DNA from: Phallusia mammillata
Taxonomy: Eukaryota
Length of the DNA stretch: 64,000 nt
NCBI GenBank assembly: GCA_965637545.1
Contig: OZ281494.1
Location: forward strand, 9,238,001 to 9,302,000
Direction: 5' to 3'
The number at the start of each line of letters is the position of its first letter. The stretch's first letter is position 1. The notes under the pieces are model-generated. The model saw only the letters and a program-made list of their open reading frames with translations, had not been told where the DNA came from and searched no databases. A program made the position numbers and the translations under genes. Shown here in pieces: positions 39,092-64,000 of this stretch.

Positions 39092-39442
39092 ATGTTTTCA
39101 ATTTTTAAGTGAGAAATTGGCACGCATCAACCCAATTGGGTCAAAATCTGAATAGAATATTGTTGTTTCGTTTTACGGATCCTATCATATATGGTATGTA
39201 TACATCAAAAATTGTTTTCTTTGTCTTTGTATTTAAGCTAAACACGAAAGACGCAAAAATGTTTTTGTTTATGCCACTGCGTTTTGTTTTTACCAACGGT
39301 CCAATTATAAATGTATTTGTAGATTTTTGCGCAAGAGCAGACATAAAGCGAATGTTTAACTTTTTAACGTCAAATCAACACCTTGATCTCAATTGAAGAA
39401 AATCAAATAGCAAGTGAAGATGTGGGATCAACGTGCAATGTT

Positions 39443-42400
39443 TTATTCTTTCACTCGAAGAGCTAAACCTTCTTGATCATCTTCCTTGCATTCGTCTTTA
39501 CCAGGTTTAGGCTGAAAGAGCTGCAAGAATATTTTGTTAGAAATATTGAAATGTGTCCACTCCATAGACAATGCACGTGTACATGTGCATAGCAAAAAAA
39601 TTGGACGGGACAACAAATAAGTTCTACATTCGGGTTCAATAGAATAAACCGTCTCAATACATTTCGGATTTTTCACAACTTATTATATCAACCTTTAAAA
39701 ATTGTGACTAATTTGTATGTATAGAGCTCCTGTCATCCATACATCGTAAAACCACCTTGTAATAACTAGTAAGCTTAAGTTCATGGGATCTGATATTAAC
39801 AATCAGATTAACGGCTATCTCTACCGGTTTTAGAGCTTCGCTCAAGTAGGTGGGCAAATTGTTTTTATCATTATGTGTGGTTTTATCAAATATGAATTTC
39901 AAATCTAACTCTGCAATTCTTAGAGCCGACTGAAGAAGTCTACTTTGCAAAGCATAGTCTTTTACCTGATATATGTCATCTCCATTTCTGATCGTTTGTA
40001 CAATTTTGTAAATCGCATATCCAGGAATAAATACGAAACACATGACACTGATCAGGTGACCCACAACTTCTGTCCACGGGGGAAACACGTATTCGTTGTA
40101 TTTCAGAGGTTCAATCGTGGAAATGTAGTAGATTGATAACAGCTGTGACATTTCAAAATTGAGATAATTTGACCCCATTGTGAAGTAGCATATTAAATGC
40201 CAGGAAAGATTTTTTTTGCTGGAAAAAATACCACTTGAAACTATAATCGATATTTTACCGCGGTTATTGCAGGACTGACAAACTTCCATGATATCTTAAG
40301 CCATAGTCTTCTTCCCCGATGATCTCCGGTCATTTTGACGATATCTTTCCAATATCTTTCGAACCCGTAGAACCACGCCACCGCCACACACTCGCAAGTT
40401 GTGATCAAGAACCAACACCAACCAGAGTTCGCGTAGCGATTGAGAAGCTCAAATACGTAGACTCCTCCCTGCCACAGTTAGAAGAAAATATATTTAACTG
40501 CGGGTTTGCATTTAAATGTTTACCGTCAGGTTATTTTGGTAAATATGTATTGGATGATTTAATGTTTTGAATGTGCTGCAGCGATGCAGTATAATGATAT
40601 GTAGGCTATTTGCAGTTTGAAAGAAAATCTTGTAGATTCTAAAGAATCTTTAATTTAAATTCAAATTAAACTTCAAAATATCGGGGATGCTTTCTAAGAA
40701 ATTCAGGATTCCCAAGTTGGTTTATCTGCAGAAATATGTTGTCATCTCATTAAACAGTTTAGAAGTAACAAAAATACTTTCTTTCTTCTACCTGTGTAAG
40801 CATTGGTAAGCCAAGAAGCATGAGAAATGTGCAAAGTAAGGCTTGTGAAATCTCTCTTCCGTATCGATGTTGGCGTACCGTTCTAACGTTATCCATCAGT
40901 ACTGCAATAATCGCCTCAAGCACGACAAACTATAAAACAGCTGAAAAGTTTCAGTGAAACTTTTTAAGTTTTCTTTGCTTTGCTTCCCGCCTGTTGTTTC
41001 TTAAAAGAACCGATTTAAGCAACCTACTAGTTTATAGTTTATCGCTTGAACTCGACCAAGCCGTCAGTCATTCAACTCTCGATTAAGCTTTTGATGTGGA
41101 CCAGGCTTAAGTTGGAGACTTTCCACAAAAATCAAATACGAAATACCTGTGAATCAAATCCGAGCAATAATAGTGTCAGGAAGAAAAGTGCGCTCCACAA
41201 CTGCGGAAACGGAAGAAGTGACAATGCTTCAGGATAAGTAACAAACACAAGACCGGGTCCAGATGTTGCCACATCATGAATAGTTGTGTTCTACAAACAG
41301 ATGTGCGGTTTGATCAGCAGAAAGCTTTTATTGAATGAAGGAATTGAACACTTACCTGATATGTTGCCATATAACCAAGAGTTGAAAACACTGCGAATCC
41401 GGCTATAAAACTTGTTAGAAAGTTTCCAACGGCTATTGCAACAGCATCTCTGACAAAAATTTGAAACAAACTATTGTGTTGGAAAGTTAAGTTCCAAGTT
41501 ATTTTAGGCTCGCTGTTTTCTAAAATTGTATTGTTGCATGCCGGTATGTAAGTTAAATCATCAGAACAACGACCTTTAAGTGGATCCCAAGTGTAGGTTA
41601 CTTTTGGATTCGAATTCTTGAATACAACGGCCACACAAGGAACACCCATACGCCCAAACAATTTTTTGTGATGTATTTATCACCGTGTTGGTTGGTGGAT
41701 AAGGTGCTATTGAAAAAGTGGTTTGACTGGACGTTAATTAAGTAAAAATACCTGTGACGCGTTTTCAGAATTTCTGAATCGATTTTGGCAAAGTCAATTT
41801 TGAACAAGTGAACTAGAACATACCGACTATAGTTGTAACTCTAAGTACCCGCGAATTTAAAACCTAAATTACTTATCATGATATATCACCTCCAAAAGTT
41901 GTGATGGTAATTGTTGTAACTTCCGAGAATAATTAATGTGCCCAATCCAGGACCATTCGTGTAGATAACTTGAGAGCAAGCTCCTACCCAAGTCTGCAGG
42001 GAAAAATGATAGTTTACACATGACAGGCGAATGCTTCAATATTGGTTACCGAAATTTCCATTAGCTTTTCGACTTGCGGTGTCAGGTAGAAATATATTCC
42101 ACTCCATGCGCCCTCAAGTGTCGCACTTCGTATTGTTATAACCACGATAAGGAAAACTGGAAGTGTAGCAGTCACATAAACAATCTGTAAAACAGATGGA
42201 AAACTTATGAGCCAAATTCTATTTTCAACAACCCCAAAAAGTAAAGCTTGCGTAACCGATCGTATCTTTACAATTTTCGTTACCTTGGAGGTCCATTTGA
42301 TGCCTTTAAAGGTGCACAAATAGAAGAGGACCCACATTATCACATTGTAGAGTACCAGATCCGATCTAATGCTTCCTACTTCATTGATGCTTGTGGTAAG

Positions 42401-44466
42401 GTTTAACACTTCACTCCTGTATAATGCAATCGGAATAAGTTGTTACAAATTACGTACTTGCCTGTTTGACATGCAAAAATAGTCAAAACCCATCCGGATA
42501 AGTCAAGATATGTTTGAGACCAATTTAACTTTGCGCACCGTTATACATTATTATCGACCTTACAGAGAGACATGTCAAATCAATTGTTTTTACTGTCGTA
42601 GGTGTGTTTTATTTTCTACATCAACTCTAATCGGTCTACTCTAAATAACAACATTAAATCATTTCGTTTGTTTTTAAATGTAATCGGGCGTTTGCTATTT
42701 ATAGTCTTTTTATTCTTACTTCCAATATTCAGTGGCTGCAGATATAGTTTTATTTTTCTGCCCATGAGTGTGATTTAAACTTGAGTTTAGTTGCATTTCA
42801 CCAATCGTTGTGCACGCAGCTGTGTTCCAGGGATTGTCGCATGAAGCCCAGGGGAGCTTTGCAGAAAAACTTTTGACGAAAAATTTGGTTGACCACACCA
42901 AGACGATAGGATAAATGAGCTTCATCAACAACTGAATCACCAATTGAGCGAAGGCAACACCTGCAATGCACACACATTCTAAAAATGAAGCTAAAGCTAT
43001 TCTTGGAGCGAGCGACACTTTTTCAAGTATGTTACCAGTGGTGGGATTCAAATTTTTTGTCGGGTTCTATCACAAAAGTCATATTTTTCAGCCGGTTCTG
43101 TTTACAAAAAGTCCATTGACAGTAACCAGTAATGCTAACCGGTTCGCTGATAGAACCAGTGCGAGCCAGCTGAATCCCACCACCGTATGTTACTGTATAG
43201 GGTAACCACCAAAGCAGTTCGTAATATCCATAGCGTACCATGTCGCCTAAAGCGCCGAATCCATAACATGGAATATAATACAACAGCATAAAGCCCCGGG
43301 ATTACCCAGAATTCGACAGTTTCAAGCGCCTAAAAGTAGACGGATCGGGTGGTATAAAACAAACCAAAAGCACACAAATCAGTATAGCGGTCTCGTCATC
43401 ACAAAAATAATGGATCCTATAGTACTTTAAGAGAAAATATTATCTATTATTTTGGAATTGGTAATAGCGACTTTTTTCCGACACAAGTGATACTACTTCA
43501 ATAAAGGAAGCATAACTTATTACCGGCTTCCCTTTCTTTGAGTGGATCACACTTTGATGAAACGCGGTAATTGACACTCATTAAACAATATGGACAACAA
43601 CACCCTTTGGAATTTTAGAAAACCCAAAATATTTTTACTAGAGCGTTTGTACAGTAAAGTTCGCTTAAACCAAGCTGCAACTACAATGCTCAATGTCAGC
43701 GAAAAAAGTTTTTGCATGTAGTAGCAACTTCGTTACGTGAAAATTAAGCAAAAATTACTAAATTACAAGTCGCACAGTAAACTGCTTCTGTTGTTTGGTT
43801 GAAGCTCAACGGGTCATCTGTTAAGAATTTTATATTTGATAGTGGCATCCCGAGTCCGAATCAATTTTTGTCTCATGGCTTGACGAGTCAAGTCAAGTCT
43901 TTTCATTGCTGAGACTCAAGTCAAGTCAAGTCAAGTATTTAAAAAAGGTGACTTTAGTCGGACACGAGTCGAGTTACTAAATCAAATCTCCCAATCACTG
44001 CATACACGTAACAATTAATGCCATGGATTCCTCTTACTTACGTCGTGTTTTGCACCGTATTCGCTTGAGCATCAATCTCGGATATAGCTACAAGTTTTTG
44101 TCATAATTACCTTTGAAAATAGGGACTTCTGACCAGCTTTTAACCAGTCCCCTCCGCAACTTCTGGCCCAGAGAAATTTCGAGGACGATTAGAGGAACAG
44201 CAATCACTGCACCGAATACCAGGTATGCGACAAGAAATGCACCTATGAAAGCATTTCAATGCTAGTACAAGCTCTCTGCATGATAACTGTTATTTTGTCT
44301 TACCTCCTCCATATTTGAAACACATGTACGGAAATCTCCAAACGTTTCCTAACCCAATAGCGTATCCCAACGCAGCAAATATAAAGTCCCACGATTTCTT
44401 CCATTCTGGTCGCGGCTTCTTTTGGTCAATAGATCGTTGTTTATTACATTTATCCGATGAATACAT
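39443..44466 (-). CDS. SLC6 Na+/Cl- dependent transporter, GABA/taurine/creatine subfamily-like (copy 1, intact), 582 aa
   Basis: 12 exons: 44466-44304, 44242-44111, 42960-42720, 42416-42284, 42184-42050, 41993-41890, 41449-41356, 41290-41147, 40929-40792, 40468-40259, 40142-39966, 39520-39443 (1749 nt, phases consistent). Motifs [59 protein letters not shown]. Confidence 0.92.
43036..43185. mobile_element. hAT MITE in SLC6 intron 2 (also at 49399-49548, 55762-55911, 62125-62274)
   Basis: TIR CAGTGGTGGGATTCA / TGAATCCCACCACCG; perfect TSD TATGTTAC; internal GGTTCTATCA/TGATAGAACC inverted repeat. Confidence 0.9.
43851..43975. repeat. (AAGTC/GAGTC)n pentamer tract, probably a DNA-transposon subterminal remnant (repeated in each unit)
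   Basis: GAGTCAAGTCAAGTC at 43885 and TCAAGTCAAGTCAAGTCAAGT at 43916; no convincing TIR or TSD. Confidence 0.45.
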
Positions 44467-44845
44467 GATAAAATTTATACGCCTCTCACGCGTAAAGTCT
44501 AAAACCAATTGACTGATCCGCCTATAGTACAATTCATTTTAACTTTGCTTGAGCTTGACAGTTCCTTCTTGTCCAAACTCGTAACGTTAGTCTTTAAGCT
44601 TTTATTCACTGCTATCAATTACATTATTGTTTTTTGCGGTTTCAAGGTATTGGCATCGAACCTCCGGTAACTTTTTGCATATACCTGAGCCTGTATTAAA
44701 CCCAAGTTAAAAAGCAGGTCTTCAGAAGCAACAAGGTTATACAACTGCTTATGAGATGTTTTGAACACTGTTGAGTATCTACCACAGCCCTCTCAAATTA
44801 TTCAAGTGATCAAGACATTTTTGTAATACCCATTTTTTTATACGC

Positions 44846-45060
44846 CAGTGGTTCTCAAACTTTTTCTGTTGCGACGCCTCTGGAAAAGTTTTCTGGTCTT
44901 GCGACGCACCAGCAAATAAAAGTTAGTGAGAAAACTTATTATTAAAGTTGTGTTTATTGATACAACCACAAAAAGCCACGAAACGCAACTATTCTGCGAC
45001 GCCCTTGGAAAATTGAAACGACGCACCAGAGCGTCGCGACGCACAGTTTGAGAACTACTG
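44846..45060. mobile_element. hAT MITE in the SLC6 5' flank (also at 51209-51423, 57572-57786, 63935 to the window end)
   Basis: TIR CAGTGGTTCTCAAAC / GTTTGAGAACTACTG; TSD TTATACGC/TCATAGGC (6 of 8 match); internal GCGACGC repeats. Confidence 0.85.
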
Positions 45061-45696
45061 TCATAGGCTATAGCGCATATAGACTATAAATGAAAAAAAC
45101 TGGCGTATATTTATTTTAAGTACGACAAACCGTATCCTTCCTGACCGATCTAATTAAATATCTATTTCTTGCGAACATTATTCTGGAGGTCTCTCTACAA
45201 ACCGTCGTCATCACATTACATTGAAATAGCAATTTTTCCTATTACTGGTCGACATTCTAAGAAATCTTACGCAGGAGGTCGAATGCTACAAAAATGCTGG
45301 AATGTGCGTGCAAAACAACGCCAGCCTGGTTTGCTATCTTATTTATGTAATTGGATAATCAAAACATCAGGCAGTTTTATGTTTCACCTGATGACCAGAT
45401 CCATGCCTTTTAACGCAATAATTCAAAGCAAGTTAAATGTCTTTGAACTATGACTCAGTTGCCGCAATACAATTTTAAACAGTATTAAAATTTAAGATTC
45501 CAACCACTTAGACGTTTTGAACACTGCTGGGTATGTAACAATCCTAAACATATTGAAATCTTTGCAAGAACAGAAATGAAGCGACCAAATGCTTGACTTT
45601 TTGACGTCAAATCAAACCATCATCCCAATAAAAGAAAATCAAATAGCAAGTGAACATGTGGGATTTGTTTAGTCTATATCATCATCGTGCAATGTT

Positions 45697-48600
45697 TTAC
45701 GAACATTCTTTCACTCTAAGGGGTAAATCTTCTTGCTCGGCGACTTGCTTGGATTCGTCTTTAAAATTTTGAGGCTGAAATAGCTGTAAGAAAATTTGGT
45801 ACAAATGTTGAAAAACAAGCTTTTAGATTTACATGTAATTCACTCAATAAACAATATACGTGTGCATGCATAAGAAAAAATTGGGATGGGATGACAAATA
45901 CGTTCTGCATTGTTTTTTTTACAACTTATGTCAACCTTAAATATATTTTGTCGCAAAAAATATTTATCCAGATATATGGGCTATATATATATATTGAATA
46001 ATTTTTATGTGCAGAACTCCTGTTTTTCATGCAATGTAAAACCACCTTGTAATAAGAAGTAAGTTCATGGGCTCCTGGTATTAACCACCAGTTTGACTCG
46101 ACTTTATAATGCAGTTGATACAGTTGATACTTAAATATACACGACGATTAATATGATGCCTAACGCCTATCCGGTTTTAGAGATTTTATTTAGTAAGAGG
46201 GCCAATTTGTTTTCATTGCGATTTTTGTAATGTTATCAAATATGGATTTCAAACGTAACTCTGCAATTCATAGCACCGACTGAAGAAGTCTACATTGCGA
46301 AGCATAGTCTTTTACCTGATAGATGTCATCTCCACTTCTGATCGTCCGTACAATTTTGTAAATCGCATATCCAGGAATAAATACGAAACACATGACACTG
46401 ATCAGGTGACCCACAACTTCTGTCCACGGGGGAAACACGTATTCGTTGTATTTCAGAGGTTCAATCGTGGAAATGTAGTAGATTGATAACAGCTGTGACA
46501 TTTTAATATTGAGATAATTTGACCCCATTGTGAAGTAGCGTATTTAATGCCAGTAAAGTTTTCTTTTTTTGCAACAAAAGATACCACTTAGAACTAAAGT
46601 CGAATTTTTTTACCGCAGTTATTGCAGGGCTGACAAACTTCCACGATATCTTAAGCCATAGTCTTCTTCCCCGATGATCTCCGGTCATTTTGACGATATC
46701 TTTCCAATATCGTTCGAACCCGTAGAACCACGCCACCGCCACACACTCGCAAGTTGTGATCAAGAACCAACACCAGCCAGAGTTCGCGTAGCGATTGAGA
46801 AGCTCAAATACGTAGACTCCTCCCTGCCACAGTTAGAAGAAAATATATTTAACTGCGGATTTGCATTTAAATGTTTTGCGAGTAAAAACGCTATATTTTG
46901 ATGAATATGTATTGAATGATTTAATGTTTTGAATGAACGATCCATTATAATGGCGTACGGTAGGCTATTTGTAGTGTGAAAAAATCGTATCCATATTTTA
47001 TTGTAAAGAATCTTTGATTTAAATTCAAATTAAACTTTAAAACATCGGGGATGTTTTCTAAGAAATTTAGGACTTCCAAGTTGGTTTATCTGCAGAAATA
47101 TGTTGTCATCTCATTAAACAGTTTAGAAGTAACAAAAATACTTTCTTTCTTCTACCTGTGTAAGCATTGGTAAGCCAAGAAGCATGAGAAATGTGCAAAG
47201 TAAGGCTTGTGAAATTTCTCTTCCGTATCGATGTTGGCGTACCGTTCTAACGTTATCCATCAGTACTGCAATAATCGCCTCAAGCACGACAAACTATAAA
47301 ACAGCTGAAAAGTTTCAGTGAAACTTTTTAAGTTTTCTTTGCTTTGCTTCCAGCCTATTGGTTTTTAAAAGAACCGATTTAAGCAACCTACTAGTTTATA
47401 GTTTATCGCTTGAACTCGACCAAGCCGTCAGTCCTTCCACTCTCGATTAAGCGTTTGATGTAGACCAGGCTTAAGTTGGAGACTTTCCACAAAAATCAAA
47501 TACGAAATACCTGTGAATCAAATCCGAGCAATAATATTGTCACGAAGAAAAGTGCGCTCCACAACTGCGGAAACGGAAGAAGTGACAATGCTTCAGGATA
47601 AGTAACAAACACAAGACCGGGTCCAGATGTTGCCACATCATGAATAGTTGTGTTCTACAAACATATGTGCGGTTTGATCAGCAGAAAACTTTTATTGAAC
47701 GAATGAATGGACATTTACTTGGTATGTTGCCATATAACCAAGGGTTGAGAACACTGCGAATCCGGCTATAAAACTTGTTAGAAAGTTTCCAACGGCTATT
47801 GCAACAGCATCTCTGACGAAAATTTGAAACAAACTATTGTGTTGGAAAGTTAAGTTCCAAGTTATTTTAGGTTCGCTGTTTTCTAAAATTGTATTGTTGC
47901 ATGCCGGTATGTAAGTTAAATCATCAGAACAACGACCTTTAAGTGGATCCCAAGTGTAGGTTACTTTTGGATTCGAATTCTTGAATACAACGACCACATA
48001 AGGAACACCCATACGCCCAAACAATTTTTTGTGATGTATTTATCACCGTGTTGGTTGGTGGATAAGGTGCTATTGAAAAAGTGGTTTGACTGGACGTTAA
48101 TTAAGTAAAAATACCTGTGACGCGTTTTCAGAATTTCTGAATCGATTTTGGCAAAGTCAATTTTGAACAAGTGAACTAGAACATACCGACTATAGTTGTA
48201 ACTCTAAGTACCCGCGAATTTAAAACCTAAATTACTTATCATGATATATCACCTCCAAAAGTTGTGATGGTAATTGTTGTAACTTCCGAGAATAATTAAT
48301 GTGCCCAATCCAGGACCATTCGTGTAGATAACTTGAGAGCAAGCTCCTACCCAAGTCTGCAGGGAAAAATGATAGTTTACACATGACAGGCGAATGCTTC
48401 AATATTGGTTACCGAAATTTCCATTAGCTTTTCGACTTGCGGTGTCAGGTAGAAATATATTCCACTCCATGCGCCCTCAAGTGTCGCACTTCGTATTGTT
48501 ATAACCACGATAAGGAAAACTGGAAGTGTAGCAGTCACATAAACAATCTGTAAAACAGATGGAAAACTTATGAGCCAAATTCTATTTTCAACAACCCCAA

Positions 48601-50829
48601 AAAGTAAAGCTTGCGTAACCGATCGTATCTTTACAATTTTCGTTACCTTGGAGGTCCATTTGATGCCTTTAAAGGTGCACAAATAGAAGAGGACCCACAT
48701 TATCACATTGTAGAGTACCAGATCCGATCTAATGCTTCCTACTTCATTGATGCTTGTGGTAAGGTTTAACACTTCACTCCTGTATAATGCAATCGGAATA
48801 AGTTGTTACAAATTACGTACTTGCCTGTTTGACATGCAAAAATAGTCAAAACCCATCCGGATAAGTCAAGATATGTTTGAGACCAATTTAACTTTGCGCA
48901 CCGTTATACATTATTATCGACCTTACAGAGAGACATGTCAAATCAATTGTTTTTACTGTCGTAGGTGTGTTTTATTTTCTACATCAACTCTAATCGGTCT
49001 ACTCTAAATAACAACATTAAATCATTTCGTTTGTTTTTAAATGTAATCGGGCGTTTGCTATTTATAGTCTTTTTATTCTTACTTCCAATATTCAGTGGCT
49101 GCAGATATAGTTTTATTTTTCTGCCCATGAGTGTGATTTAAACTTGAGTTTAGTTGCATTTCACCAATCGTTGTGCACGCAGCTGTGTTCCAGGGATTGT
49201 CGCATGAAGCCCAGGGGAGCTTTGCAGAAAAACTTTTGACGAAAAATTTGGTTGACCACACCAAGACGATAGGATAAATGAGCTTCATCAACAACTGAAT
49301 CACCAATTGAGCGAAGGCAACACCTGCAATGCACACACATTCTAAAAATGAAGCTAAAGCTATTCTTGGAGCGAGCGACACTTTTTCAAGTATGTTACCA
49401 GTGGTGGGATTCAAATTTTTTGTCGGGTTCTATCACAAAAGTCATATTTTTCAGCCGGTTCTGTTTACAAAAAGTCCATTGACAGTAACCAGTAATGCTA
49501 ACCGGTTCGCTGATAGAACCAGTGCGAGCCAGCTGAATCCCACCACCGTATGTTACTGTATAGGGTAACCACCAAAGCAGTTCGTAATATCCATAGCGTA
49601 CCATGTCGCCTAAAGCGCCGAATCCATAACATGGAATATAATACAACAGCATAAAGCCCCGGGATTACCCAGAATTCGACAGTTTCAAGCGCCTAAAAGT
49701 AGACGGATCGGGTGGTATAAAACAAACCAAAAGCACACAAATCAGTATAGCGGTCTCGTCATCACAAAAATAATGGATCCTATAGTACTTTAAGAGAAAA
49801 TATTATCTATTATTTTGGAATTGGTAATAGCGACTTTTTTCCGACACAAGTGATACTACTTCAATAAAGGAAGCATAACTTATTACCGGCTTCCCTTTCT
49901 TTGAGTGGATCACACTTTGATGAAACGCGGTAATTGACACTCATTAAACAATATGGACAACAACACCCTTTGGAATTTTAGAAAACCCAAAATATTTTTA
50001 CTAGAGCGTTTGTACAGTAAAGTTCGCTTAAACCAAGCTGCAACTACAATGCTCAATGTCAGCGAAAAAAGTTTTTGCATGTAGTAGCAACTTCGTTACG
50101 TGAAAATTAAGCAAAAATTACTAAATTACAAGTCGCACAGTAAACTGCTTCTGTTGTTTGGTTGAAGCTCAACGGGTCATCTGTTAAGAATTTTATATTT
50201 GATAGTGGCATCCCGAGTCCGAATCAATTTTTGTCTCATGGCTTGACGAGTCAAGTCAAGTCTTTTCATTGCTGAGACTCAAGTCAAGTCAAGTCAAGTA
50301 TTTAAAAAAGGTGACTTTAGTCGGACACGAGTCGAGTTACTAAATCAAATCTCCCAATCACTGCATACACGTAACAATTAATGCCATGGATTCCTCTTAC
50401 TTACGTCGTGTTTTGCACCGTATTCGCTTGAGCATCAATCTCGGATATAGCTACAAGTTTTTGTCATAATTACCTTTGAAAATAGGGACTTCTGACCAGC
50501 TTTTAACCAGTCCCCTCCGCAACTTCTGGCCCAGAGAAATTTCGAGGACGATTAGAGGAACAGCAATCACTGCACCGAATACCAGGTATGCGACAAGAAA
50601 TGCACCTATGAAAGCATTTCAATGCTAGTACAAGCTCTCTGCATGATAACTGTTATTTTGTCTTACCTCCTCCATATTTGAAACACATGTACGGAAATCT
50701 CCAAACGTTTCCTAACCCAATAGCGTATCCCAACGCAGCAAATATAAAGTCCCACGATTTCTTCCATTCTGGTCGCGGCTTCTTTTGGTCAATAGATCGT
50801 TGTTTATTACATTTATCCGATGAATACAT
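45697..50829 (-). CDS. SLC6 transporter copy 2 (intact), 585 aa
   Basis: Same 12-exon structure as copy 1; ATG at 50829; last exon 45783-45697 [28 protein letters not shown]. Confidence 0.9.
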
Positions 50830-52059: not shown

Positions 52060-55000
52060 TTACGAACATTCTTTCACTCTAAGGGGTAAATCTTCTTGCT
52101 CGGCGACTTGCTTGGATTCGTCTTTAAAATTTTGAGGCTGAAATAGCTGTAAGAAAATTTGGTACAAATGTTGAAAAACAAGCTTTTAGATTTACATGTA
52201 ATTCACTCAATAAACAATATACGTGTGCATGCATAAGAAAAAATTGGGATGGGATGACAAATACGTTCTGCATTGTTTTTTTTACAACTTATGTCAACCT
52301 TAAATATATTTTGTCGCAAAAAATATTTATCCAGATATATGGGCTATATATATATATTGAATAATTTTTATGTGCAGAACTCCTGTTTTTCATGCAATGT
52401 AAAACCACCTTGTAATAAGAAGTAAGTTCATGGGCTCCTGGTATTAACCACCAGTTTGACTCGACTTTATAATGCAGTTGATACAGTTGATACTTAAATA
52501 TACACGACGATTAATATGATGCCTAACGCCTATCCGGTTTTAGAGATTTTATTTAGTAAGAGGGCCAATTTGTTTTCATTGCGATTTTTGTAATGTTATC
52601 AAATATGGATTTCAAACGTAACTCTGCAATTCATAGCACCGACTGAAGAAGTCTACATTGCGAAGCATAGTCTTTTACCTGATAGATGTCATCTCCACTT
52701 CTGATCGTCCGTACAATTTTGTAAATCGCATATCCAGGAATAAATACGAAACACATGACACTGATCAGGTGACCCACAACTTCTGTCCACGGGGGAAACA
52801 CGTATTCGTTGTATTTCAGAGGTTCAATCGTGGAAATGTAGTAGATTGATAACAGCTGTGACATTTTAATATTGAGATAATTTGACCCCATTGTGAAGTA
52901 GCGTATTTAATGCCAGTAAAGTTTTCTTTTTTTGCAACAAAAGATACCACTTAGAACTAAAGTCGAATTTTTTTACCGCAGTTATTGCAGGGCTGACAAA
53001 CTTCCACGATATCTTAAGCCATAGTCTTCTTCCCCGATGATCTCCGGTCATTTTGACGATATCTTTCCAATATCGTTCGAACCCGTAGAACCACGCCACC
53101 GCCACACACTCGCAAGTTGTGATCAAGAACCAACACCAGCCAGAGTTCGCGTAGCGATTGAGAAGCTCAAATACGTAGACTCCTCCCTGCCACAGTTAGA
53201 AGAAAATATATTTAACTGCGGATTTGCATTTAAATGTTTTGCGAGTAAAAACGCTATATTTTGATGAATATGTATTGAATGATTTAATGTTTTGAATGAA
53301 CGATCCATTATAATGGCGTACGGTAGGCTATTTGTAGTGTGAAAAAATCGTATCCATATTTTATTGTAAAGAATCTTTGATTTAAATTCAAATTAAACTT
53401 TAAAACATCGGGGATGTTTTCTAAGAAATTTAGGACTTCCAAGTTGGTTTATCTGCAGAAATATGTTGTCATCTCATTAAACAGTTTAGAAGTAACAAAA
53501 ATACTTTCTTTCTTCTACCTGTGTAAGCATTGGTAAGCCAAGAAGCATGAGAAATGTGCAAAGTAAGGCTTGTGAAATTTCTCTTCCGTATCGATGTTGG
53601 CGTACCGTTCTAACGTTATCCATCAGTACTGCAATAATCGCCTCAAGCACGACAAACTATAAAACAGCTGAAAAGTTTCAGTGAAACTTTTTAAGTTTTC
53701 TTTGTTTTGCTTCCAGCCTATTGGTTTTTAAAAGAACCGATTTAAGCAACCTACTAGTTTATAGTTTATCGCTTGAACTCGACCAAGCCGTCAGTCCTTC
53801 CACTCTCGATTAAGCGTCTGATGTAGACCAGGCTTAAGTTGGAGACTTTCCACAAAAATCAAATACGAAATACCTGTGAATCAAATCCGAGCAATAATAT
53901 TGTCACGAAGAAAAGTGCGCTCCACAACTGCGGAAACGGAAGAAGTGACAATGCTTCAGGATAAGTAACAAACACAAGACCGGGTCCAGATGTTGCCACA
54001 TCATGAATAGTTGTGTTCTACAAACATATGTGCGGTTTGATCAGCAGAAAACTTTTATTGAACGAATGAATGGACATTTACTTGGTATGTTGCCATATAA
54101 CCAAGGGTTGAGAACACTGCGAATCCGGCTATAAAACTTGTTAGAAAGTTTCCAACGGCTATTGCAACAGCATCTCTGACGAAAATTTGAAACAAACTAT
54201 TGTGTTGGAAAGTTAAGTTCCAAGTTATTTTAGGTTCGCTGTTTTCTAAAATTGTATTGTTGCATGCCGGTATGTAAGTTAAATCATCAGAACAACGACC
54301 TTTAAGTGGATCCCAAGTGTAGGTTACTTTTGGATTCGAATTCTTGAATACAACGACCACATAAGGAACACCCATACGCCCAAACAATTTTTTGTGATGT
54401 ATTTATCACCGTGTTGGTTGGTGGATAAGGTGCTATTGAAAAAGTGGTTTGACTGGACGTTAATTAAGTAAAAATACCTGTGACGCGTTTTCAGAATTTC
54501 TGAATCGATTTTGGCAAAGTCAATTTTGAACAAGTGAACTAGAACATACCGACTATAGTTGTAACTCTAAGTACCCGCGAATTTAAAACCTAAATTACTT
54601 ATCATGATATATCACCTCCAAAAGTTGTGATGGTAATTGTTGTAACTTCCGAGAATAATTAATGTGCCCAATCCAGGACCATTCGTGTAGATAACTTGAG
54701 AGCAAGCTCCTACCCAAGTCTGCAGGGAAAAATGATAGTTTACACATGACAGGCGAATGCTTCAATATTGGTTACCGAAATTTCCATTAGCTTTTCGACT
54801 TGCGGTGTCAGGTAGAAATATATTCCACTCCATGCGCCCTCAAGTGTCGCACTTCGTATTGTTATAACCACGATAAGGAAAACTGGAAGTGTAGCAGTCA
54901 CATAAACAATCTGTAAAACAGATGGAAAACTTATGAGCCAAATTCTATTTTCAACAACCCCAAAAAGTAAAGCTTGCGTAACCGATCGTATCTTTACAAT

Positions 55001-57192
55001 TTTCGTTACCTTGGAGGTCCATTTGATGCCTTTAAAGGTGCACAAATAGAAGAGGACCCACATTATCACATTGTAGAGTACCAGATCCGATCTAATGCTT
55101 CCTACTTCATTGATGCTTGTGGTAAGGTTTAACACTTCACTCCTGTATAATGCAATCGGAATAAGTTGTTACAAATTACGTACTTGCCTGTTTGACATGC
55201 AAAAATAGTCAAAACCCATCCGGATAAGTCAAGATATGTTTGAGACCAATTTAACTTTGCGCACCGTTATACATTATTATCGACCTTACAGAGAGACATG
55301 TCAAATCAATTGTTTTTACTGTCGTAGGTGTGTTTTATTTTCTACATCAACTCTAATCGGTCTACTCTAAATAACAACATTAAATCATTTCGTTTGTTTT
55401 TAAATGTAATCGGGCGTTTGCTATTTATAGTCTTTTTATTCTTACTTCCAATATTCAGTGGCTGCAGATATAGTTTTATTTTTCTGCCCATGAGTGTGAT
55501 TTAAACTTGAGTTTAGTTGCATTTCACCAATCGTTGTGCACGCAGCTGTGTTCCAGGGATTGTCGCATGAAGCCCAGGGGAGCTTTGCAGAAAAACTTTT
55601 GACGAAAAATTTGGTTGACCACACCAAGACGATAGGATAAATGAGCTTCATCAACAACTGAATCACCAATTGAGCGAAGGCAACACCTGCAATGCACACA
55701 CATTCTAAAAATGAAGCTAAAGCTATTCTTGGAGCGAGCGACACTTTTTCAAGTATGTTACCAGTGGTGGGATTCAAATTTTTTGTCGGGTTCTATCACA
55801 AAAGTCATATTTTTCAGCCGGTTCTGTTTACAAAAAGTCCATTGACAGTAACCAGTAATGCTAACCGGTTCGCTGATAGAACCAGTGCGAGCCAGCTGAA
55901 TCCCACCACCGTATGTTACTGTATAGGGTAACCACCAAAGCAGTTCGTAATATCCATAGCGTACCATGTCGCCTAAAGCGCCGAATCCATAACATGGAAT
56001 ATAATACAACAGCATAAAGCCCCGGGATTACCCAGAATTCGACAGTTTCAAGCGCCTAAAAGTAGACGGATCGGGTGGTATAAAACAAACCAAAAGCACA
56101 CAAATCAGTATAGCGGTCTCGTCATCACAAAAATAATGGATCCTATAGTACTTTAAGAGAAAATATTATCTATTATTTTGGAATTGGTAATAGCGACTTT
56201 TTTCCGACACAAGTGATACTACTTCAATAAAGGAAGCATAACTTATTACCGGCTTCCCTTTCTTTGAGTGGATCACACTTTGATGAAACGCGGTAATTGA
56301 CACTCATTAAACAATATGGACAACAACACCCTTTGGAATTTTAGAAAACCCAAAATATTTTTACTAGAGCGTTTGTACAGTAAAGTTCGCTTAAACCAAG
56401 CTGCAACTACAATGCTCAATGTCAGCGAAAAAAGTTTTTGCATGTAGTAGCAACTTCGTTACGTGAAAATTAAGCAAAAATTACTAAATTACAAGTCGCA
56501 CAGTAAACTGCTTCTGTTGTTTGGTTGAAGCTCAACGGGTCATCTGTTAAGAATTTTATATTTGATAGTGGCATCCCGAGTCCGAATCAATTTTTGTCTC
56601 ATGGCTTGACGAGTCAAGTCAAGTCTTTTCATTGCTGAGACTCAAGTCAAGTCAAGTCAAGTATTTAAAAAAGGTGACTTTAGTCGGACACGAGTCGAGT
56701 TACTAAATCAAATCTCCCAATCACTGCATACACGTAACAATTAATGCCATGGATTCCTCTTACTTACGTCGTGTTTTGCACCGTATTCGCTTGAGCATCA
56801 ATCTCGGATATAGCTACAAGTTTTTGTCATAATTACCTTTGAAAATAGGGACTTCTGACCAGCTTTTAACCAGTCCCCTCCGCAACTTCTGGCCCAGAGA
56901 AATTTCGAGGACGATTAGAGGAACAGCAATCACTGCACCGAATACCAGGTATGCGACAAGAAATGCACCTATGAAAGCATTTCAATGCTAGTACAAGCTC
57001 TCTGCATGATAACTGTTATTTTGTCTTACCTCCTCCATATTTGAAACACATGTACGGAAATCTCCAAACGTTTCCTAACCCAATAGCGTATCCCAACGCA
57101 GCAAATATAAAGTCCCACGATTTCTTCCATTCTGGTCGCGGCTTCTTTTGGTCAATAGATCGTTGTTTATTACATTTATCCGATGAATACAT
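52060..57192 (-). CDS. SLC6 transporter copy 3 (intact; no coding difference from copy 2 seen)
   Basis: Copy 2 shifted by +6363; ATG and stop checked at these coordinates. Confidence 0.9.
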
Positions 57193-58422
57193 GATAAAAT
57201 TTATACGCCTCTCACGCGTAAAGTCTAAAACCAATTGACTGATCCGCCTATAGTACAATTCATTTTAACTTTGCTTGAGCTTGACAGTTCCTTCTTGTCC
57301 AAACTCGTAACGTTAGTCTTTAAGCTTTTATTCACTGCTATCAATTACATTATTGTTTTTTGCGGTTTCAAGGTATTGGCATCGAACCTCCGGTAACTTT
57401 TTGCATATACCTGAGCCTGTATTAAACCCAAGTTAAAAAGCAGGTCTTCAGAAGCAACAAGGTTATACAACTGCTTATGAGATGTTTTGAACACTGTTGA
57501 GTATCTACCACAGCCCTCTCAAATTATTCAAGTGATCAAGACATTTTTGTAATACCCATTTTTTTATACGCCAGTGGTTCTCAAACTTTTTCTGTTGCGA
57601 CGCCTCTGGAAAAGTTTTCTGGTCTTGCGACGCACCAGCAAATAAAAGTTAGTGAGAAAACTTATTATTAAAGTTGTGTTTATTGATACAACCACAAAAA
57701 GCCACGAAACGCAACTATTCTGCGACGCCCTTGGAAAATTGAAACGACGCACCAGAGCGTCGCGACGCACAGTTTGAGAACTACTGTCATAGGCTATAGC
57801 GCATATAGACTATAAATGAAAAAAACTGGCGTATATTTATTTTAAGTACGACAAACCGTATCCTTCCTGACCGATCTAATTAAATATCTATTTCTTGCGA
57901 ACATTATTCTGGAGGTCTCTCTACAAACCGTCGTCATCACATTACATTGAAATAGCAATTTTTCCTATTACTGGTCGACATTCTAAGAAATCTTACGCAG
58001 GAGGTCGAATGCTACAAAAATGCTGGAATGTGCGTGCAAAACAACGCCAGCCTGGTTTGCTATCTTATTTATGTAATTGGATAATCAAAACATCAGGCAG
58101 TTTTATGTTTCACCTGATGACCAGATCCATGCCTTTTAACGCAATAATTCAAAGCAAGTTAAATGTCTTTGAACTATGACTCAGTTGCCGCAATACAATT
58201 TTAAACAGTATTAAAATTTAAGATTCCAACCACTTAGACGTTTTGAACACTGCTGGGTATGTAACAATCCTAAACATATTGAAATCTTTGCAAGAACAGA
58301 AATGAAGCGACCAAATGCTTGACTTTTTGACGTCAAATCAAACCATCATCCCAATAAAAGAAAATCAAATAGCAAGTGAACATGTGGGATTTGTTTAGTC
58401 TATATCATCATCGTGCAATGTT

Positions 58423-61400
58423 TTACGAACATTCTTTCACTCTAAGGGGTAAATCTTCTTGCTCGGCGACTTGCTTGGATTCGTCTTTAAAATTTTGAGG
58501 CTGAAATAGCTGTAAGAAAATTTGGTACAAATGTTGAAAAACAAGCTTTTAGATTTACATGTAATTCACTCAATAAACAATATACGTGTGCATGCATAAG
58601 AAAAAATTGGGATGGGATGACAAATACGTTCTGCATTGTTTTTTTTACAACTTATGTCAACCTTAAATATATTTTGTCGCAAAAAATATTTATCCAGATA
58701 TATGGGCTATATATATATATTGAATAATTTTTATGTGCAGAACTCCTGTTTTTCATGCAATGTAAAACCACCTTGTAATAAGAAGTAAGTTCATGGGCTC
58801 CTGGTATTAACCACCAGTTTGACTCGACTTTATAATGCAGTTGATACAGTTGATACTTAAATATACACGACGATTAATATGATGCCTAACGCCTATCCGG
58901 TTTTAGAGATTTTATTTAGTAAGAGGGCCAATTTGTTTTCATTGCGATTTTTGTAATGTTATCAAATATGGATTTCAAACGTAACTCTGCAATTCATAGC
59001 ACCGACTGAAGAAGTCTACATTGCGAAGCATAGTCTTTTACCTGATAGATGTCATCTCCACTTCTGATCGTCCGTACAATTTTGTAAATCGCATATCCAG
59101 GAATAAATACGAAACACATGACACTGATCAGGTGACCCACAACTTCTGTCCACGGGGGAAACACGTATTCGTTGTATTTCAGAGGTTCAATCGTGGAAAT
59201 GTAGTAGATTGATAACAGCTGTGACATTTTAATATTGAGATAATTTGACCCCATTGTGAAGTAGCGTATTTAATGCCAGTAAAGTTTTCTTTTTTTGCAA
59301 CAAAAGATACCACTTAGAACTAAAGTCGAATTTTTTTACCGCAGTTATTGCAGGGCTGACAAACTTCCACGATATCTTAAGCCATAGTCTTCTTCCCCGA
59401 TGATCTCCGGTCATTTTGACGATATCTTTCCAATATCGTTCGAACCCGTAGAACCACGCCACCGCCACACACTCGCAAGTTGTGATCAAGAACCAACACC
59501 AGCCAGAGTTCGCGTAGCGATTGAGAAGCTCAAATACGTAGACTCCTCCCTGCCACAGTTAGAAGAAAATATATTTAACTGCGGATTTGCATTTAAATGT
59601 TTTGCGAGTAAAAACGCTATATTTTGATGAATATGTATTGAATGATTTAATGTTTTGAATGAACGATCCATTATAATGGCGTACGGTAGGCTATTTGTAG
59701 TGTGAAAAAATCGTATCCATATTTTATTGTAAAGAATCTTTGATTTAAATTCAAATTAAACTTTAAAACATCGGGGATGTTTTCTAAGAAATTTAGGACT
59801 TCCAAGTTGGTTTATCTGCAGAAATATGTTGTCATCTCATTAAACAGTTTAGAAGTAACAAAAATACTTTCTTTCTTCTACCTGTGTAAGCATTGGTAAG
59901 CCAAGAAGCATGAGAAATGTGCAAAGTAAGGCTTGTGAAATTTCTCTTCCGTATCGATGTTGGCGTACCGTTCTAACGTTATCCATCAGTACTGCAATAA
60001 TCGCCTCAAGCACGACAAACTATAAAACAGCTGAAAAGTTTCAGTGAAACTTTTTAAGTTTTCTTTGCTTTGCTTCCAGCCTATTGGTTTTTAAAAGAAC
60101 CGATTTAAGCAACCTACTAGTTTATAGTTTATCGCTTGAACTCGACCAAGCCGTCAGTCCTTCCACTCTCGATTAAGCGTTTGATGTAGACCAGGCTTAA
60201 GTTGGAGACTTTCCACAAAAATCAAATACGAAATACCTGTGAATCAAATCCGAGCAATAATATTGTCACGAAGAAAAGTGCGCTCCACAACTGCGGAAAC
60301 GGAAGAAGTGACAATGCTTCAGGATAAGTAACAAACACAAGACCGGGTCCAGATGTTGCCACATCATGAATAGTTGTGTTCTACAAACATATGTGCGGTT
60401 TGATCAGCAGAAAACTTTTATTGAACGAATGAATGGACATTTACTTGGTATGTTGCCATATAACCAAGGGTTGAGAACACTGCGAATCCGGCTATAAAAC
60501 TTGTTAGAAAGTTTCCAACGGCTATTGCAACAGCATCTCTGACGAAAATTTGAAACAAACTATTGTGTTGGAAAGTTAAGTTCCAAGTTATTTTAGGTTC
60601 GCTGTTTTCTAAAATTGTATTGTTGCATGCCGGTATGTAAGTTAAATCATCAGAACAACGACCTTTAAGTGGATCCCAAGTGTAGGTTACTTTTGGATTC
60701 GAATTCTTGAATACAACGACCACATAAGGAACACCCATACGCCCAAACAATTTTTTGTGATGTATTTATCACCGTGTTGGTTGGTGGATAAGGTGCTATT
60801 GAAAAAGTGGTTTGACTGGACGTTAATTAAGTAAAAATACCTGTGACGCGTTTTCAGAATTTCTGAATCGATTTTGGCAAAGTCAATTTTGAACAAGTGA
60901 ACTAGAACATACCGACTATAGTTGTAACTCTAAGTACCCGCGAATTTAAAACCTAAATTACTTATCATGATATATCACCTCCAAAAGTTGTGATGGTAAT
61001 TGTTGTAACTTCCGAGAATAATTAATGTGCCCAATCCAGGACCATTCGTGTAGATAACTTGAGAGCAAGCTCCTACCCAAGTCTGCAGGGAAAAATGATA
61101 GTTTACACATGACAGGCGAATGCTTCAATATTGGTTACCGAAATTTCCATTAGCTTTTCGACTTGCGGTGTCAGGTAGAAATATATTCCACTCCATGCGC
61201 CCTCAAGTGTCGCACTTCGTATTGTTATAACCACGATAAGGAAAACTGGAAGTGTAGCAGTCACATAAACAATCTGTAAAACAGATGGAAAACTTATGAG
61301 CCAAATTCTATTTTCAACAACCCCAAAAAGTAAAGCTTGCGTAACCGATCGTATCTTTACAATTTTCGTTACCTTGGAGGTCCATTTGATGCCTTTAAAG

Positions 61401-63555
61401 GTGCACAAATAGAAGAGGACCCACATTATCACATTGTAGAGTACCAGATCCGATCTAATGCTTCCTACTTCATTGATGCTTGTGGTAAGGTTTAACACTT
61501 CACTCCTGTATAATGCAATCGGAATAAGTTGTTACAAATTACGTACTTGCCTGTTTGACATGCAAAAATAGTCAAAACCCATCCGGATAAGTCAAGATAT
61601 GTTTGAGACCAATTTAACTTTGCGCACCGTTATACATTATTATCGACCTTACAGAGAGACATGTCAAATCAATTGTTTTTACTGTCGTAGGTGTGTTTTA
61701 TTTTCTACATCAACTCTAATCGGTCTACTCTAAATAACAACATTAAATCATTTCGTTTGTTTTTAAATGTAATCGGGCGTTTGCTATTTATAGTCTTTTT
61801 ATTCTTACTTCCAATATTCAGTGGCTGCAGATATAGTTTTATTTTTCTGCCCATGAGTGTGATTTAAACTTGAGTTTAGTTGCATTTCACCAATCGTTGT
61901 GCACGCAGCTGTGTTCCAGGGATTGTCGCATGAAGCCCAGGGGAGCTTTGCAGAAAAACTTTTGACGAAAAATTTGGTTGACCACACCAAGACGATAGGA
62001 TAAATGAGCTTCATCAACAACTGAATCACCAATTGAGCGAAGGCAACACCTGCAATGCACACACATTCTAAAAATGAAGCTAAAGCTATTCTTGGAGCGA
62101 GCGACACTTTTTCAAGTATGTTACCAGTGGTGGGATTCAAATTTTTTGTCGGGTTCTATCACAAAAGTCATATTTTTCAGCCGGTTCTGTTTACAAAAAG
62201 TCCATTGACAGTAACCAGTAATGCTAACCGGTTCGCTGATAGAACCAGTGCGAGCCAGCTGAATCCCACCACCGTATGTTACTGTATAGGGTAACCACCA
62301 AAGCAGTTCGTAATATCCATAGCGTACCATGTCGCCTAAAGCGCCGAATCCATAACATGGAATATAATACAACAGCATAAAGCCCCGGGATTACCCAGAA
62401 TTCGACAGTTTCAAGCGCCTAAAAGTAGACGGATCGGGTGGTATAAAACAAACCAAAAGCACACAAATCAGTATAGCGGTCTCGTCATCACAAAAATAAT
62501 GGATCCTATAGTACTTTAAGAGAAAATATTATCTATTATTTTGGAATTGGTAATAGCGACTTTTTTCCGACACAAGTGATACTACTTCAATAAAGGAAGC
62601 ATAACTTATTACCGGCTTCCCTTTCTTTGAGTGGATCACACTTTGATGAAACGCGGTAATTGACACTCATTAAACAATATGGACAACAACACCCTTTGGA
62701 ATTTTAGAAAACCCAAAATATTTTTACTAGAGCGTTTGTACAGTAAAGTTCGCTTAAACCAAGCTGCAACTACAATGCTCAATGTCAGCGAAAAAAGTTT
62801 TTGCATGTAGTAGCAACTTCGTTACGTGAAAATTAAGCAAAAATTACTAAATTACAAGTCGCACAGTAAACTGCTTCTGTTGTTTGGTTGAAGCTCAACG
62901 GGTCATCTGTTAAGAATTTTATATTTGATAGTGGCATCCCGAGTCCGAATCAATTTTTGTCTCATGGCTTGACGAGTCAAGTCAAGTCTTTTCATTGCTG
63001 AGACTCAAGTCAAGTCAAGTCAAGTATTTAAAAAAGGTGACTTTAGTCGGACACGAGTCGAGTTACTAAATCAAATCTCCCAATCACTGCATACACGTAA
63101 CAATTAATGCCATGGATTCCTCTTACTTACGTCGTGTTTTGCACCGTATTCGCTTGAGCATCAATCTCGGATATAGCTACAAGTTTTTGTCATAATTACC
63201 TTTGAAAATAGGGACTTCTGACCAGCTTTTAACCAGTCCCCTCCGCAACTTCTGGCCCAGAGAAATTTCGAGGACGATTAGAGGAACAGCAATCACTGCA
63301 CCGAATACCAGGTATGCGACAAGAAATGCACCTATGAAAGCATTTCAATGCTAGTACAAGCTCTCTGCATGATAACTGTTATTTTGTCTTACCTCCTCCA
63401 TATTTGAAACACATGTACGGAAATCTCCAAACGTTTCCTAACCCAATAGCGTATCCCAACGCAGCAAATATAAAGTCCCACGATTTCTTCCATTCTGGTC
63501 GCGGCTTCTTTTGGTCAATAGATCGTTGTTTATTACATTTATCCGATGAATACAT
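58423..63555 (-). CDS. SLC6 transporter copy 4 (intact; no coding difference from copy 2 seen)
   Basis: Copy 2 shifted by +12726; ATG checked at 63553-63555. Confidence 0.9.
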
Positions 63556-64000
63556 GATAAAATTTATACGCCTCTCACGCGTAAAGTCTAAAACCAATTG
63601 ACTGATCCGCCTATAGTACAATTCATTTTAACTTTGCTTGAGCTTGACAGTTCCTTCTTGTCCAAACTCGTAACGTTAGTCTTTAAGCTTTTATTCACTG
63701 CTATCAATTACATTATTGTTTTTTGCGGTTTCAAGGTATTGGCATCGAACCTCCGGTAACTTTTTGCATATACCTGAGCCTGTATTAAACCCAAGTTAAA
63801 AAGCAGGTCTTCAGAAGCAACAAGGTTATACAACTGCTTATGAGATGTTTTGAACACTGTTGAGTATCTACCACAGCCCTCTCAAATTATTCAAGTGATC
63901 AAGACATTTTTGTAATACCCATTTTTTTATACGCCAGTGGTTCTCAAACTTTTTCTGTTGCGACGCCTCTGGAAAAGTTTTCTGGTCTTGCGACGCACCA

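What the first reader, a model, noticed from the sequence alone, without database searches (positions are those of the whole stretch)
41637..64000. Very recent whole-gene tandem amplification (6363-bp unit, at least 3.5 copies) of a transporter
Each unit holds a complete 12-exon gene with its 5' flank, and I saw no indels even in homopolymer runs. This looks like an ongoing copy-number expansion raising the dosage of one SLC6 variant, a pattern associated with recent adaptation (inference). The array continues past the window. A collapsed or over-expanded assembly is the main alternative.
Basis: partly seen in the sequence, partly recalled or inferred. Interest (0 to 1): 0.7.

Follow-up and report, generated by a model that had tools for sequence, protein, structure and literature searches.

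The report
Near-identical tandem copies of SLC6 transporter gene
Inside an older cluster of transporter genes in what earlier notes call a sea-squirt genome, one 6.4-kb gene-plus-promoter unit is written almost four times in a row with virtually no differences, which is most likely a very young duplication by unequal crossing-over, an ordinary way for gene families to grow, though the exact copy number could not be checked against raw reads.

Summary
From window 41637 the sequence is perfectly periodic at 6363 bp with no indels. The only differences are two intronic transitions private to the middle copy. The tract ends 1,642 bp past the window: 24,006 bp, or 3.77 units, not an open-ended array.

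Each unit carries an intact minus-strand SLC6 (Pfam SNF) gene. It has 11 coding exons (not 12) and 577 codons, identical in three complete copies. The tract begins in intron 6 of the left neighbour and ends in intron 10 of the right one. Both neighbours are therefore chimeric, open-frame paralogues, and identity fades outward on each side.

The best reading is recent unequal crossing-over, needing at least two exchange events, in a pre-existing tandem array of a large SLC6 family.

Only Logan contigs of public runs were available, so depth and spanning reads could not be tested. Contigs from two studies match the amplified version exactly and show its junctions. A third animal lacks its diagnostic letters. 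Contig word-depths are ambiguous, at roughly 2-5 copies. RNA contigs show splicing, so the gene group is expressed.

Nothing tested supports the adaptation claim, and a wrong assembled copy number is not excluded. The scan noted other recent tandem repeats in this genome.

The parts
41637..64000 (.). Perfectly 6363-bp-periodic tract. It continues to extended coordinate 65642, giving 24,006 bp or 3.77 units.
   Evidence: lag-6363 identity is 100% with no indels and two substitutions only.
41637..47999 (.). Unit U1.
   Evidence: 99.97% identical to U2 (2 substitutions) and identical to U3.
48000..54362 (.). Unit U2. It carries the two private intronic transitions at 53705 (T) and 53818 (C).
   Evidence: the flanking diverged copies carry the U1/U3 letters, so the U2 letters are derived.
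54363..60725 (.). Unit U3.
60726..64000 (.). Unit U4, first part. It stays identical for 4,917 bp (to extended 65642), then becomes the 97.5% copy called beta_R.
46268..50829 (-). Amplified SLC6 gene copy G1. It has 11 coding exons, 577 codons, GT-AG introns throughout and no internal stop.
   Evidence: (Pfam SNF positions 1-523, exon by exon). Introns 48548-48646 and 47294-47510 are seen spliced out in RNA contigs.
52631..57192 (-). Amplified gene copy G2. Its coding sequence is identical to G1.
58994..63555 (-). Amplified gene copy G3. Its coding sequence is identical to G1.
39918..44466 (-). Left chimeric gene L. Exons 1-6 and the promoter are identical to the amplified gene. Exons 7-11 come from the older copy: 21 nt and 7 residues differ, and the stop codon is lost, so the frame reads on 69 codons.
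39824..41636 (.). beta_L: the older homologue of unit positions 4535-6362, at 92.6% identity. It forms the left edge of the perfect tract, and the boundary lies in intron 6.
31027..35451 (-). Older paralogue P0. Its exons are 73-98% identical to the unit, and exon 3 is only partly recognisable.
51204..51428 (.). A 225-bp MITE-like interspersed element with 21-nt terminal inverted repeats, in the intergenic/promoter region. It is repeated with each unit at 44841-45065, 57567-57791 and from 63930.
   Evidence: (40 or more genomic copies at 92-97%).
49400..49600 (.). Very high-copy interspersed repeat inside intron 2.
   Evidence: contig word-depth there is about 1000-fold above the neighbouring bins in all four runs.

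Best explanation
A tandem cluster of SLC6 (sodium:neurotransmitter/amino-acid symporter family) genes on the minus strand has recently gained extra copies of one 6363-bp unit. The likely cause is unequal crossing-over between neighbouring paralogues that were already in register. The assembled haplotype reads beta_L - (alpha beta)x3 - alpha - beta_R. Alpha (4,917 bp) holds exons 6-1, the promoter region and the last exon of the next gene. Beta (1,446 bp) holds exons 10-7.

The result is three identical complete genes plus two chimeric neighbours. Four genes (L, G1-G3) share an identical promoter and 5' half. This should raise the dosage of that transcript if all copies are active (inferred).

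Because the perfect tract is 3.77 units and not a whole number, at least two exchange events are needed: duplication plus a further crossover or a long conversion (inferred). The copies are far younger than the other differences at this locus: 0-2 differences per 6.4 kb, against 2.5% to the next paralogue and about 1% to the nearest version in another animal.

The protein is a divergent Na+-coupled transporter, probably also Cl--coupled, of the amino-acid/osmolyte type. It has Gly and not Asp in the TM1 GYAIGLGN motif. Its substrate is unknown.
For: Exact periodicity, two private substitutions and the tract limits.

Identity falls outward on both sides. On the left it goes 100 > 97.5 > 90% > unalignable; on the right, 100 > 99.6 > 97-98 > 77%. 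This shows repeated exchange at the locus over time, with the perfect tract as its youngest layer.

The amplified beta has at least 11 private letters where beta_L and beta_R agree. It is therefore an old, separate copy and not a fresh chimera.

Intact gene models, identical coding sequence, and open frames in both chimeric neighbours.

Independent data: contigs of X2 (study P1, 2024) and X3 (study P2, 2018) match the amplified version with 0 differences. They bridge alpha-tail to beta (X2, 46460-46826) and beta to alpha-head (X3, 47788-48274). Alpha therefore has two different left neighbours, that is at least two copies. In X2 and X3, contigs of the amplified type are 2.2-2.9 times deeper than contigs carrying non-reference letters at 45630, 50465 and 51018.

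RNA contigs of X8 are spliced at two of my introns and match exon 1 exactly.

Tandem duplication is the documented route by which SLC6/GAT genes arose (PMC3849432). This genome has dozens of SLC6 loci in tandem clusters.
Against: No raw reads were available, so neither depth nor spanning reads were tested.

The layout 'one shared node alpha with a loop beta' is also what an assembler prints when it walks a repeat loop a chosen number of times.

At three sites where both flanking copies agree against the amplified one (47537, 47543, 47664), only the flank-type letters survive in the contigs of all runs. The flank-type contig is also deeper than the amplified-type contigs: X2 1034 versus 482-562, X3 31.7 versus 19-27. 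The assembly holds 3 flank-type and 3 amplified-type copies of that exon. This fits 3-4 copies only if those animals are heterozygous.

Confidence: 0.6

Rival explanations
1. The assembled copy number is wrong. The real haplotype has the older three-gene array with only one amplified-type unit between the flanks (beta_L alpha beta alpha beta_R), or some other number, possibly more than four. The perfect identity is produced by traversing a collapsed repeat loop and by polishing with ambiguously placed reads.
For: The perfect tract (24 kb) is longer than typical accurate long reads. Only the two U2 variants anchor it. The non-integer 3.77 units equals 'loop plus shared node'. The amplified type shows no excess word-depth over the flank type in X2, X3 or X5.
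Against: The two U2 variants are substitutions, not homopolymer indels, and neither flank carries them. They sit 12.1 and 11.8 kb from the two edges, so ordinary 15-20 kb reads could resolve exactly this structure (inference). Assemblers collapse such repeats more often than they expand them (general knowledge). In two runs, amplified-type contigs are 2.2-2.9 times deeper than non-reference-letter contigs.
Confidence: 0.25
2. The copies are old, and gene conversion (concerted evolution) keeps them identical. They were not recently duplicated.
For: The graded identity around the tract shows that sequence exchange between the paralogues has happened repeatedly.
Against: Identity is complete over whole 6.4-kb units, including introns, the promoter region and two transposon insertions, with no patchwork. 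Conversion tracts are usually short, so this would need many overlapping events. The flanking copies 1-2 kb away keep 2.5-7% divergence.
Confidence: 0.07

Closest known systems
Recent tandem segmental duplication / copy-number variant formed by non-allelic homologous recombination in a tandem gene family
   Same: Copies lie head to tail with an exact period and in register with older paralogues. Divergence is near zero across coding and non-coding DNA. The genes at the edges are chimeric. One independent animal lacks the amplified version's diagnostic letters.
   Different: Copy number and polymorphism have not been measured here. The perfect tract is a non-integer number of units, so more than one event is needed.
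SLC6 / SNF family (Pfam PF00209) Na+-coupled transporters; GAT-group genes are known to have arisen by tandem duplication (PMC3849432)
   Same: The exons cover the SNF profile from 1 to 523. TM1 reads [12 protein letters not shown]6 reads G-P-G-L-G...SYN, and the TM7 and TM8 motifs are present. Growth by tandem duplication matches the family's history.
   Different: No vertebrate subfamily is singled out. Best solved-structure hits change from exon to exon: taurine transporter, fly dopamine transporter, SIT1. The TM6 stretch reads [11 protein letters not shown] where most members have QIFFS-type residues. The substrate is unknown.
Other recent tandem repeats noted in this genome (3.5-kb exon cassette in a VWF-like gene; duplicated front of a protease gene)
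   Same: Same genome, kilobase-scale near-identical tandem copies.
   Different: Those are repeats within a gene that lengthen a protein. This one copies a whole gene with its promoter. I did not re-examine them.

Membership tests
SLC6 / SNF (PF00209) | Significant match to the SNF profile along its whole length | tested here: met
   Five of the nine tested pieces match at 48.5-65.5 bits and three more at 29.4-32.6 bits, all above the 27-bit cut-off. One piece reached only 19.4 bits and one gave no match. The matches run from profile position 1 to 523 with gaps at about 160-203, 250-282 and 365-428. Exon 6 (TM6), not, matches solved SLC6 structures.
SLC6 / SNF (PF00209) | TM1 and TM6 unwound-helix motifs (GxGNxWRFPY; GxG...SYN) that form the Na+/substrate site | tested here: met
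   Translations and alignments. TM1 is canonical. TM6 keeps Q, GPGLG and SYN but has IYT where FFS is usual.
SLC6 / SNF (PF00209) | Na+-coupled transport activity | not testable with these tools
   Needs expression and uptake assays.
GAT group (GABA/taurine/creatine/betaine carriers) of SLC6 | Phylogenetic placement within the group | tested here: inconclusive
Exon-wise searches of solved structures give best hits in different subfamilies at similar scores.
Recent NAHR-type tandem amplification (CNV) | Head-to-tail copies with an exact period and near-zero divergence in non-coding DNA | tested here: met
Recent NAHR-type tandem amplification (CNV) | Pre-existing homologous sequence in register at both edges, and chimeric edge genes | tested here: met
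Recent NAHR-type tandem amplification (CNV) | Read depth and spanning reads agree with the assembled copy number | tested here: inconclusive
   Only Logan contigs were served. The junctions alpha>beta and beta>alpha are confirmed in X2 and X3. Word-depth ratios are compatible with about 2-5 copies.
Recent NAHR-type tandem amplification (CNV) | Copy number differs between individuals | tested here: inconclusive
   X5 shows only non-amplified-type letters at 46554, 46937, 47357, 47364, 47537, 47543 and 47664. Contigs can drop variants, so absence is not proven.

The most novel reading that the evidence does not exclude
The 3-4-fold amplification is a haplotype-specific variant still segregating in the species. 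In this reading it has risen in frequency because extra dosage of this particular divergent SLC6 carrier is advantageous, for example for uptake of dissolved amino acids or osmolytes in some habitats. The carrier has private TM8 changes V377/I379. An identical haplotype appears in samples of two separate studies, while a third animal lacks it.
Probability: 0.1. Interest if true: 0.6.

Novelty: new member of a known kind. Interest (0 to 1): 0.3.

Why it matters
If the copy number is real, this catches a gene family in the act of growing. Three identical transporter genes and two chimeric neighbours show how unequal exchange both multiplies a gene and makes new hybrids. That would make the locus a convenient one for measuring copy-number variation and dosage effects in a marine chordate. 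If the copy number is wrong, it flags a spot where the assembly should not be trusted. In either case the mechanism and the family are well known.

Tried and rejected
- **Tandem Repeats Finder:** found nothing, because its longest period is 500. I used lag comparison instead.
- **Whole-genome DNA search with the unit:** it did not list the identical copies and mostly returned the 225-bp MITE. I fetched the flank directly instead.
- **Read depth:** impossible, because all 24 runs are kept as contigs. In hindsight that removed a single-copy depth control.
- **Copy number from contig word-depth:** rejected as unreliable. Two contigs (48.0-49.1 kb) are 1.4 times deeper than expected under any model.
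- **Origin of the U2 variants:** I checked whether they came from a flanking paralogue by conversion. They did not.
- **Amplified beta as a fresh beta_L/beta_R chimera:** rejected, because it has private letters.
- **Rfam and tRNA scans of a unit:** nothing found.
- **Literature:** no report of SLC6 copy-number variation in ascidians.
- **Joined 577-codon model:** built only inside local scripts to check the frame and compare copies. It was not sent to any search or folding tool, so subfamily placement rests on single exons.
Full report
**1. The observation**

A lag comparison of the window with itself shows 100% identity at a shift of 6363 bp from position 41637 to the end of the window. There are no indels.

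The only exceptions are two substitutions in the middle copy. Position 53705 is T where 47342 and 60068 have C. Position 53818 is C where 47455 and 60181 have T.

The window is C1:9238001-9302000 of a 240-Mb assembly in 312 contigs. I fetched 40 kb downstream. The exact periodicity stops at extended coordinate 65642, which is 1,642 bp beyond the window.

The perfect tract is therefore 24,006 bp, or 3.77 units. 'The array continues past the window' is true only for a short distance.

**2. Anatomy**

Taking 48000 as unit position 1, the tract consists of two blocks:

| Block | Unit positions | Identical copies | Content |
|---|---|---|---|
| alpha | 1-4917 | 4 | exons 6-1, promoter region, last exon of the next gene |
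| beta | 4918-6363 | 3 | exons 10-7 |

- **Left of the tract** lies an older beta, called beta_L (39824-41636). It is 92.6% identical, falling to about 65% further left.
- **Right of the tract** lies beta_R (65643-67077, about 97.5%). An alpha-like stretch follows, which is 96% identical for 0.9 kb and then 87-86%.
- **Further left** sits a still older paralogue, P0 (about 31.0-35.5 kb, 73-98% in exons).
- **Gradient.** Identity falls outward in steps on both sides. The perfect tract is the youngest layer of repeated exchange at this locus.
- **Beta is an old copy.** The amplified beta has at least 11 letters of its own at sites where beta_L and beta_R agree. It is an old separate copy and not a fresh hybrid of its neighbours.
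- **U2 variants.** Neither neighbour carries them. Both lie in the intron between exons 8 and 9.

**3. The gene**

The gene is on the minus strand. Open segments match Pfam SNF (PF00209) exon by exon, and together they run from profile position 1 to 523.

I built the model from splice sites, frame continuity and two introns seen spliced out in RNA contigs. It has 11 coding exons:

| Exon | Window coordinates |
|---|---|
| 1 | 50829-50667 |
| 2 | 50605-50474 |
| 3 | 49341-49083 |
| 4 | 48776-48647 |
| 5 | 48547-48413 |
| 6 | 48356-48253 |
| 7 | 47812-47719 |
| 8 | 47654-47511 |
| 9 | 47293-47156 |
| 10 | 46823-46614 |
| 11 | 46492-46268 |

All introns are GT-AG. The frame is 1,734 nt (577 codons) with no internal stop, and it is identical in the three complete copies.

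I assembled the joined coding sequence only inside local scripts, to check the frame and compare copies.

The perfect tract starts in intron 6 of the left gene (L, 39918-44466) and ends in intron 10 of the right gene (R, extended 65357-69561). Both are chimeras:

- **Gene L** shares exons 1-6 and the promoter with the amplified gene. It differs at 7 residues in exons 7-11. It has also lost the stop codon, so the frame reads on for 69 codons.
- **Gene R** shares exons 5-7, 10 and 11. It differs at 30 residues, mostly in exons 1-3. Its exon-3 acceptor is shifted by 6 nt.
- **Both frames** stay open.
- **The amplified protein** has two private conservative changes in TM8, V377 and I379, where L and R both have Leu. 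These correspond to nucleotides 47537 and 47543.

**4. What kind of transporter**

- **TM1** is canonical ([14 protein letters not shown]) and has Gly, not the Asp of monoamine carriers.
- **TM6** keeps Q, GPGLG and SYN but reads QVIYT where most members have QIFFS.
- **TM7** keeps the N...TS residues used for chloride in the family (the functional reading rests on general knowledge of SLC6).
- **Solved structures.** Exon-wise searches give different best hits at similar scores: the taurine transporter for exon 3, the fly dopamine transporter for exon 6 and SIT1 for exon 1.

I therefore file the gene as a divergent SLC6 member of the amino-acid/osmolyte type, with subfamily and substrate unknown. 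My exon-level tests neither confirm nor exclude that.

**5. Family context**

PF00209 exons occur at dozens of places on all large contigs, many in tandem clusters. Only this array shows identical-scoring copies. The one other case is a small unplaced contig that duplicates a C2 locus and looks like a left-over haplotype.

Exon 8 has exactly six near-identical copies genome-wide, all in this cluster: beta_R, beta_L, three amplified copies and P0. Tandem duplication is the published route by which GAT-group SLC6 genes arose (PMC3849432).

**6. Is the copy number real?**

All 24 runs offered are kept as Logan contigs, so true depth and spanning reads were out of reach. I laid four runs on one whole gene copy, 45200-51199.

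*What the contigs show:*

- **Exact matches.** Contigs of X2 (study P1, 2024) and X3 (study P2, 2018) match the amplified version with 0 differences over most of the stretch.
- **Junctions.** X2 bridges alpha-tail into the amplified beta (46460-46826). X3 bridges the amplified beta into alpha-head (47788-48274). That contig carries the amplified letters at 47872, 47993 and 47999.
- **Minimum structure.** X3 also holds 70% of the words of 38401-44400, which contains beta_L joined to alpha. Alpha therefore has two different left neighbours in that animal, so at least one extra unit exists outside the assembly.
- **Run X5.** X5 (study P3) has a version about 1% different. At the seven listed sites that distinguish the amplified beta, it shows only the other letters. 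That animal may lack the amplified version, but contigs can drop variants.

*What the depths suggest:*

- **Against.** At 47537, 47543 and 47664 only flank-type letters survive in every run. The flank-type contig is also deeper than the amplified-type contigs. The figures are 1034 against 482-562 in X2, and 31.7 against 19-27 in X3. The assembly holds three copies of each type at that exon.
- **For.** In X2 and X3, amplified-type contigs are 2.2-2.9 times deeper than contigs carrying non-reference letters at 45630, 50465 and 51018.
- **Noise.** Two contigs (48.0-49.1 kb) are 1.4 times deeper than any model predicts, so the noise is large.

Taken together, the figures fit about 2-5 copies on a reference-like haplotype in heterozygous animals. 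They cannot decide between 2 and 4. I laid no unique flank, so there is no single-copy control.

**7. Expression**

Run X8, labelled only as a guess at RNA, yields contigs that skip 48548-48646 and 47294-47510 exactly at my GT-AG introns. One contig matches exon 1 and 86 nt of leader (50665-50915) without a difference.

It is therefore RNA, and genes with the amplified-type 5' half are transcribed. The one listed contig over exons 8-9 carries flank-type letters, so transcription of the amplified 3' half is not shown.

**8. Mechanism**

The most economical account is unequal crossing-over between paralogues already 6.35-6.36 kb apart.

A single such event gives a whole number of perfect units. 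A tract of 3.77 units, with all four alpha blocks identical including the two next to the diverged betas, needs at least one further exchange. That could be a second crossover at another point or a long conversion. This step is inferred.

Homogenisation of old copies by conversion alone is unlikely. Identity is unbroken over whole units, including introns, the promoter region, a 225-bp MITE-like element (51204-51428) and a very high-copy repeat in intron 2. Meanwhile sequence 1-2 kb outside the tract keeps 2.5-7% divergence.

The assembler-loop alternative remains open. The layout 'shared node plus loop' is what a graph walk would print, and the tract is longer than most accurate long reads. 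Three points count against it:

- The two U2 variants are substitutions.
- They lie 12.1 and 11.8 kb from the two edges, so ordinary 15-20-kb reads could resolve exactly this structure.
- Assemblers tend to collapse such repeats more often than they expand them (general knowledge).

**9. Verdict**

The reading as a very young whole-gene tandem amplification is the best explanation, at about 0.6. The exact number of copies is unverified.

The adaptive reading is untested and has no support here. This is a new example of a well-known process in a family known for it, so interest is modest.

Noticed in passing
window 51204-51428 (also 44841-45065, 57567-57791, and from 63930): A 225-bp element with 21-nt terminal inverted repeats (TACGCCAGTGGTTCTCAAACT...) sits in the promoter/intergenic region of each unit. 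It has 40 or more copies at 92-97% identity on all large contigs, and looks like a recently active MITE.
   Followed up: partly
window 49400-49600 (intron 2 of the amplified gene): A short interspersed repeat with enormous word-depth in every run (about 1.4 million in X2, against about 600 nearby). Contigs show many small internal rearrangements there. It was not classified.
   Followed up: no
window 31027-35451 (paralogue P0): Ten of the eleven exons map with intact splice sites, but only the start of exon 3 is recognisable (about 34026-34151). This copy may be degenerating or may have a different exon 3.
   Followed up: partly
window 39918-40142 (last exon of gene L): The stop codon of the amplified gene is replaced by a sense codon in the left chimeric gene. 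Its frame runs on for 69 more codons, giving a possible new C-terminal tail.
   Followed up: partly
G000:C256:1543-3421 versus G000:C2:8468122-8470000: A small unplaced contig carries SLC6 exons with scores identical to a C2 locus. It is probably a retained alternative haplotype, which would mean the assembly is not fully purged.
   Followed up: no
G000:C1 4.596, 4.631 and 4.665 Mb: Three SLC6 exon hits with near-equal scores lie about 34-35 kb apart. This may be another, larger-period tandem duplication of the family.
   Followed up: no
L001:6892-7391 and L001:9191-9727 (extended 70892-71391 and 73191-73727): Two copies, in opposite orientation, of a sequence about 70% similar to intron-2 DNA of the unit (unit positions 1893-2366). 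Probably an interspersed repeat.
   Followed up: no
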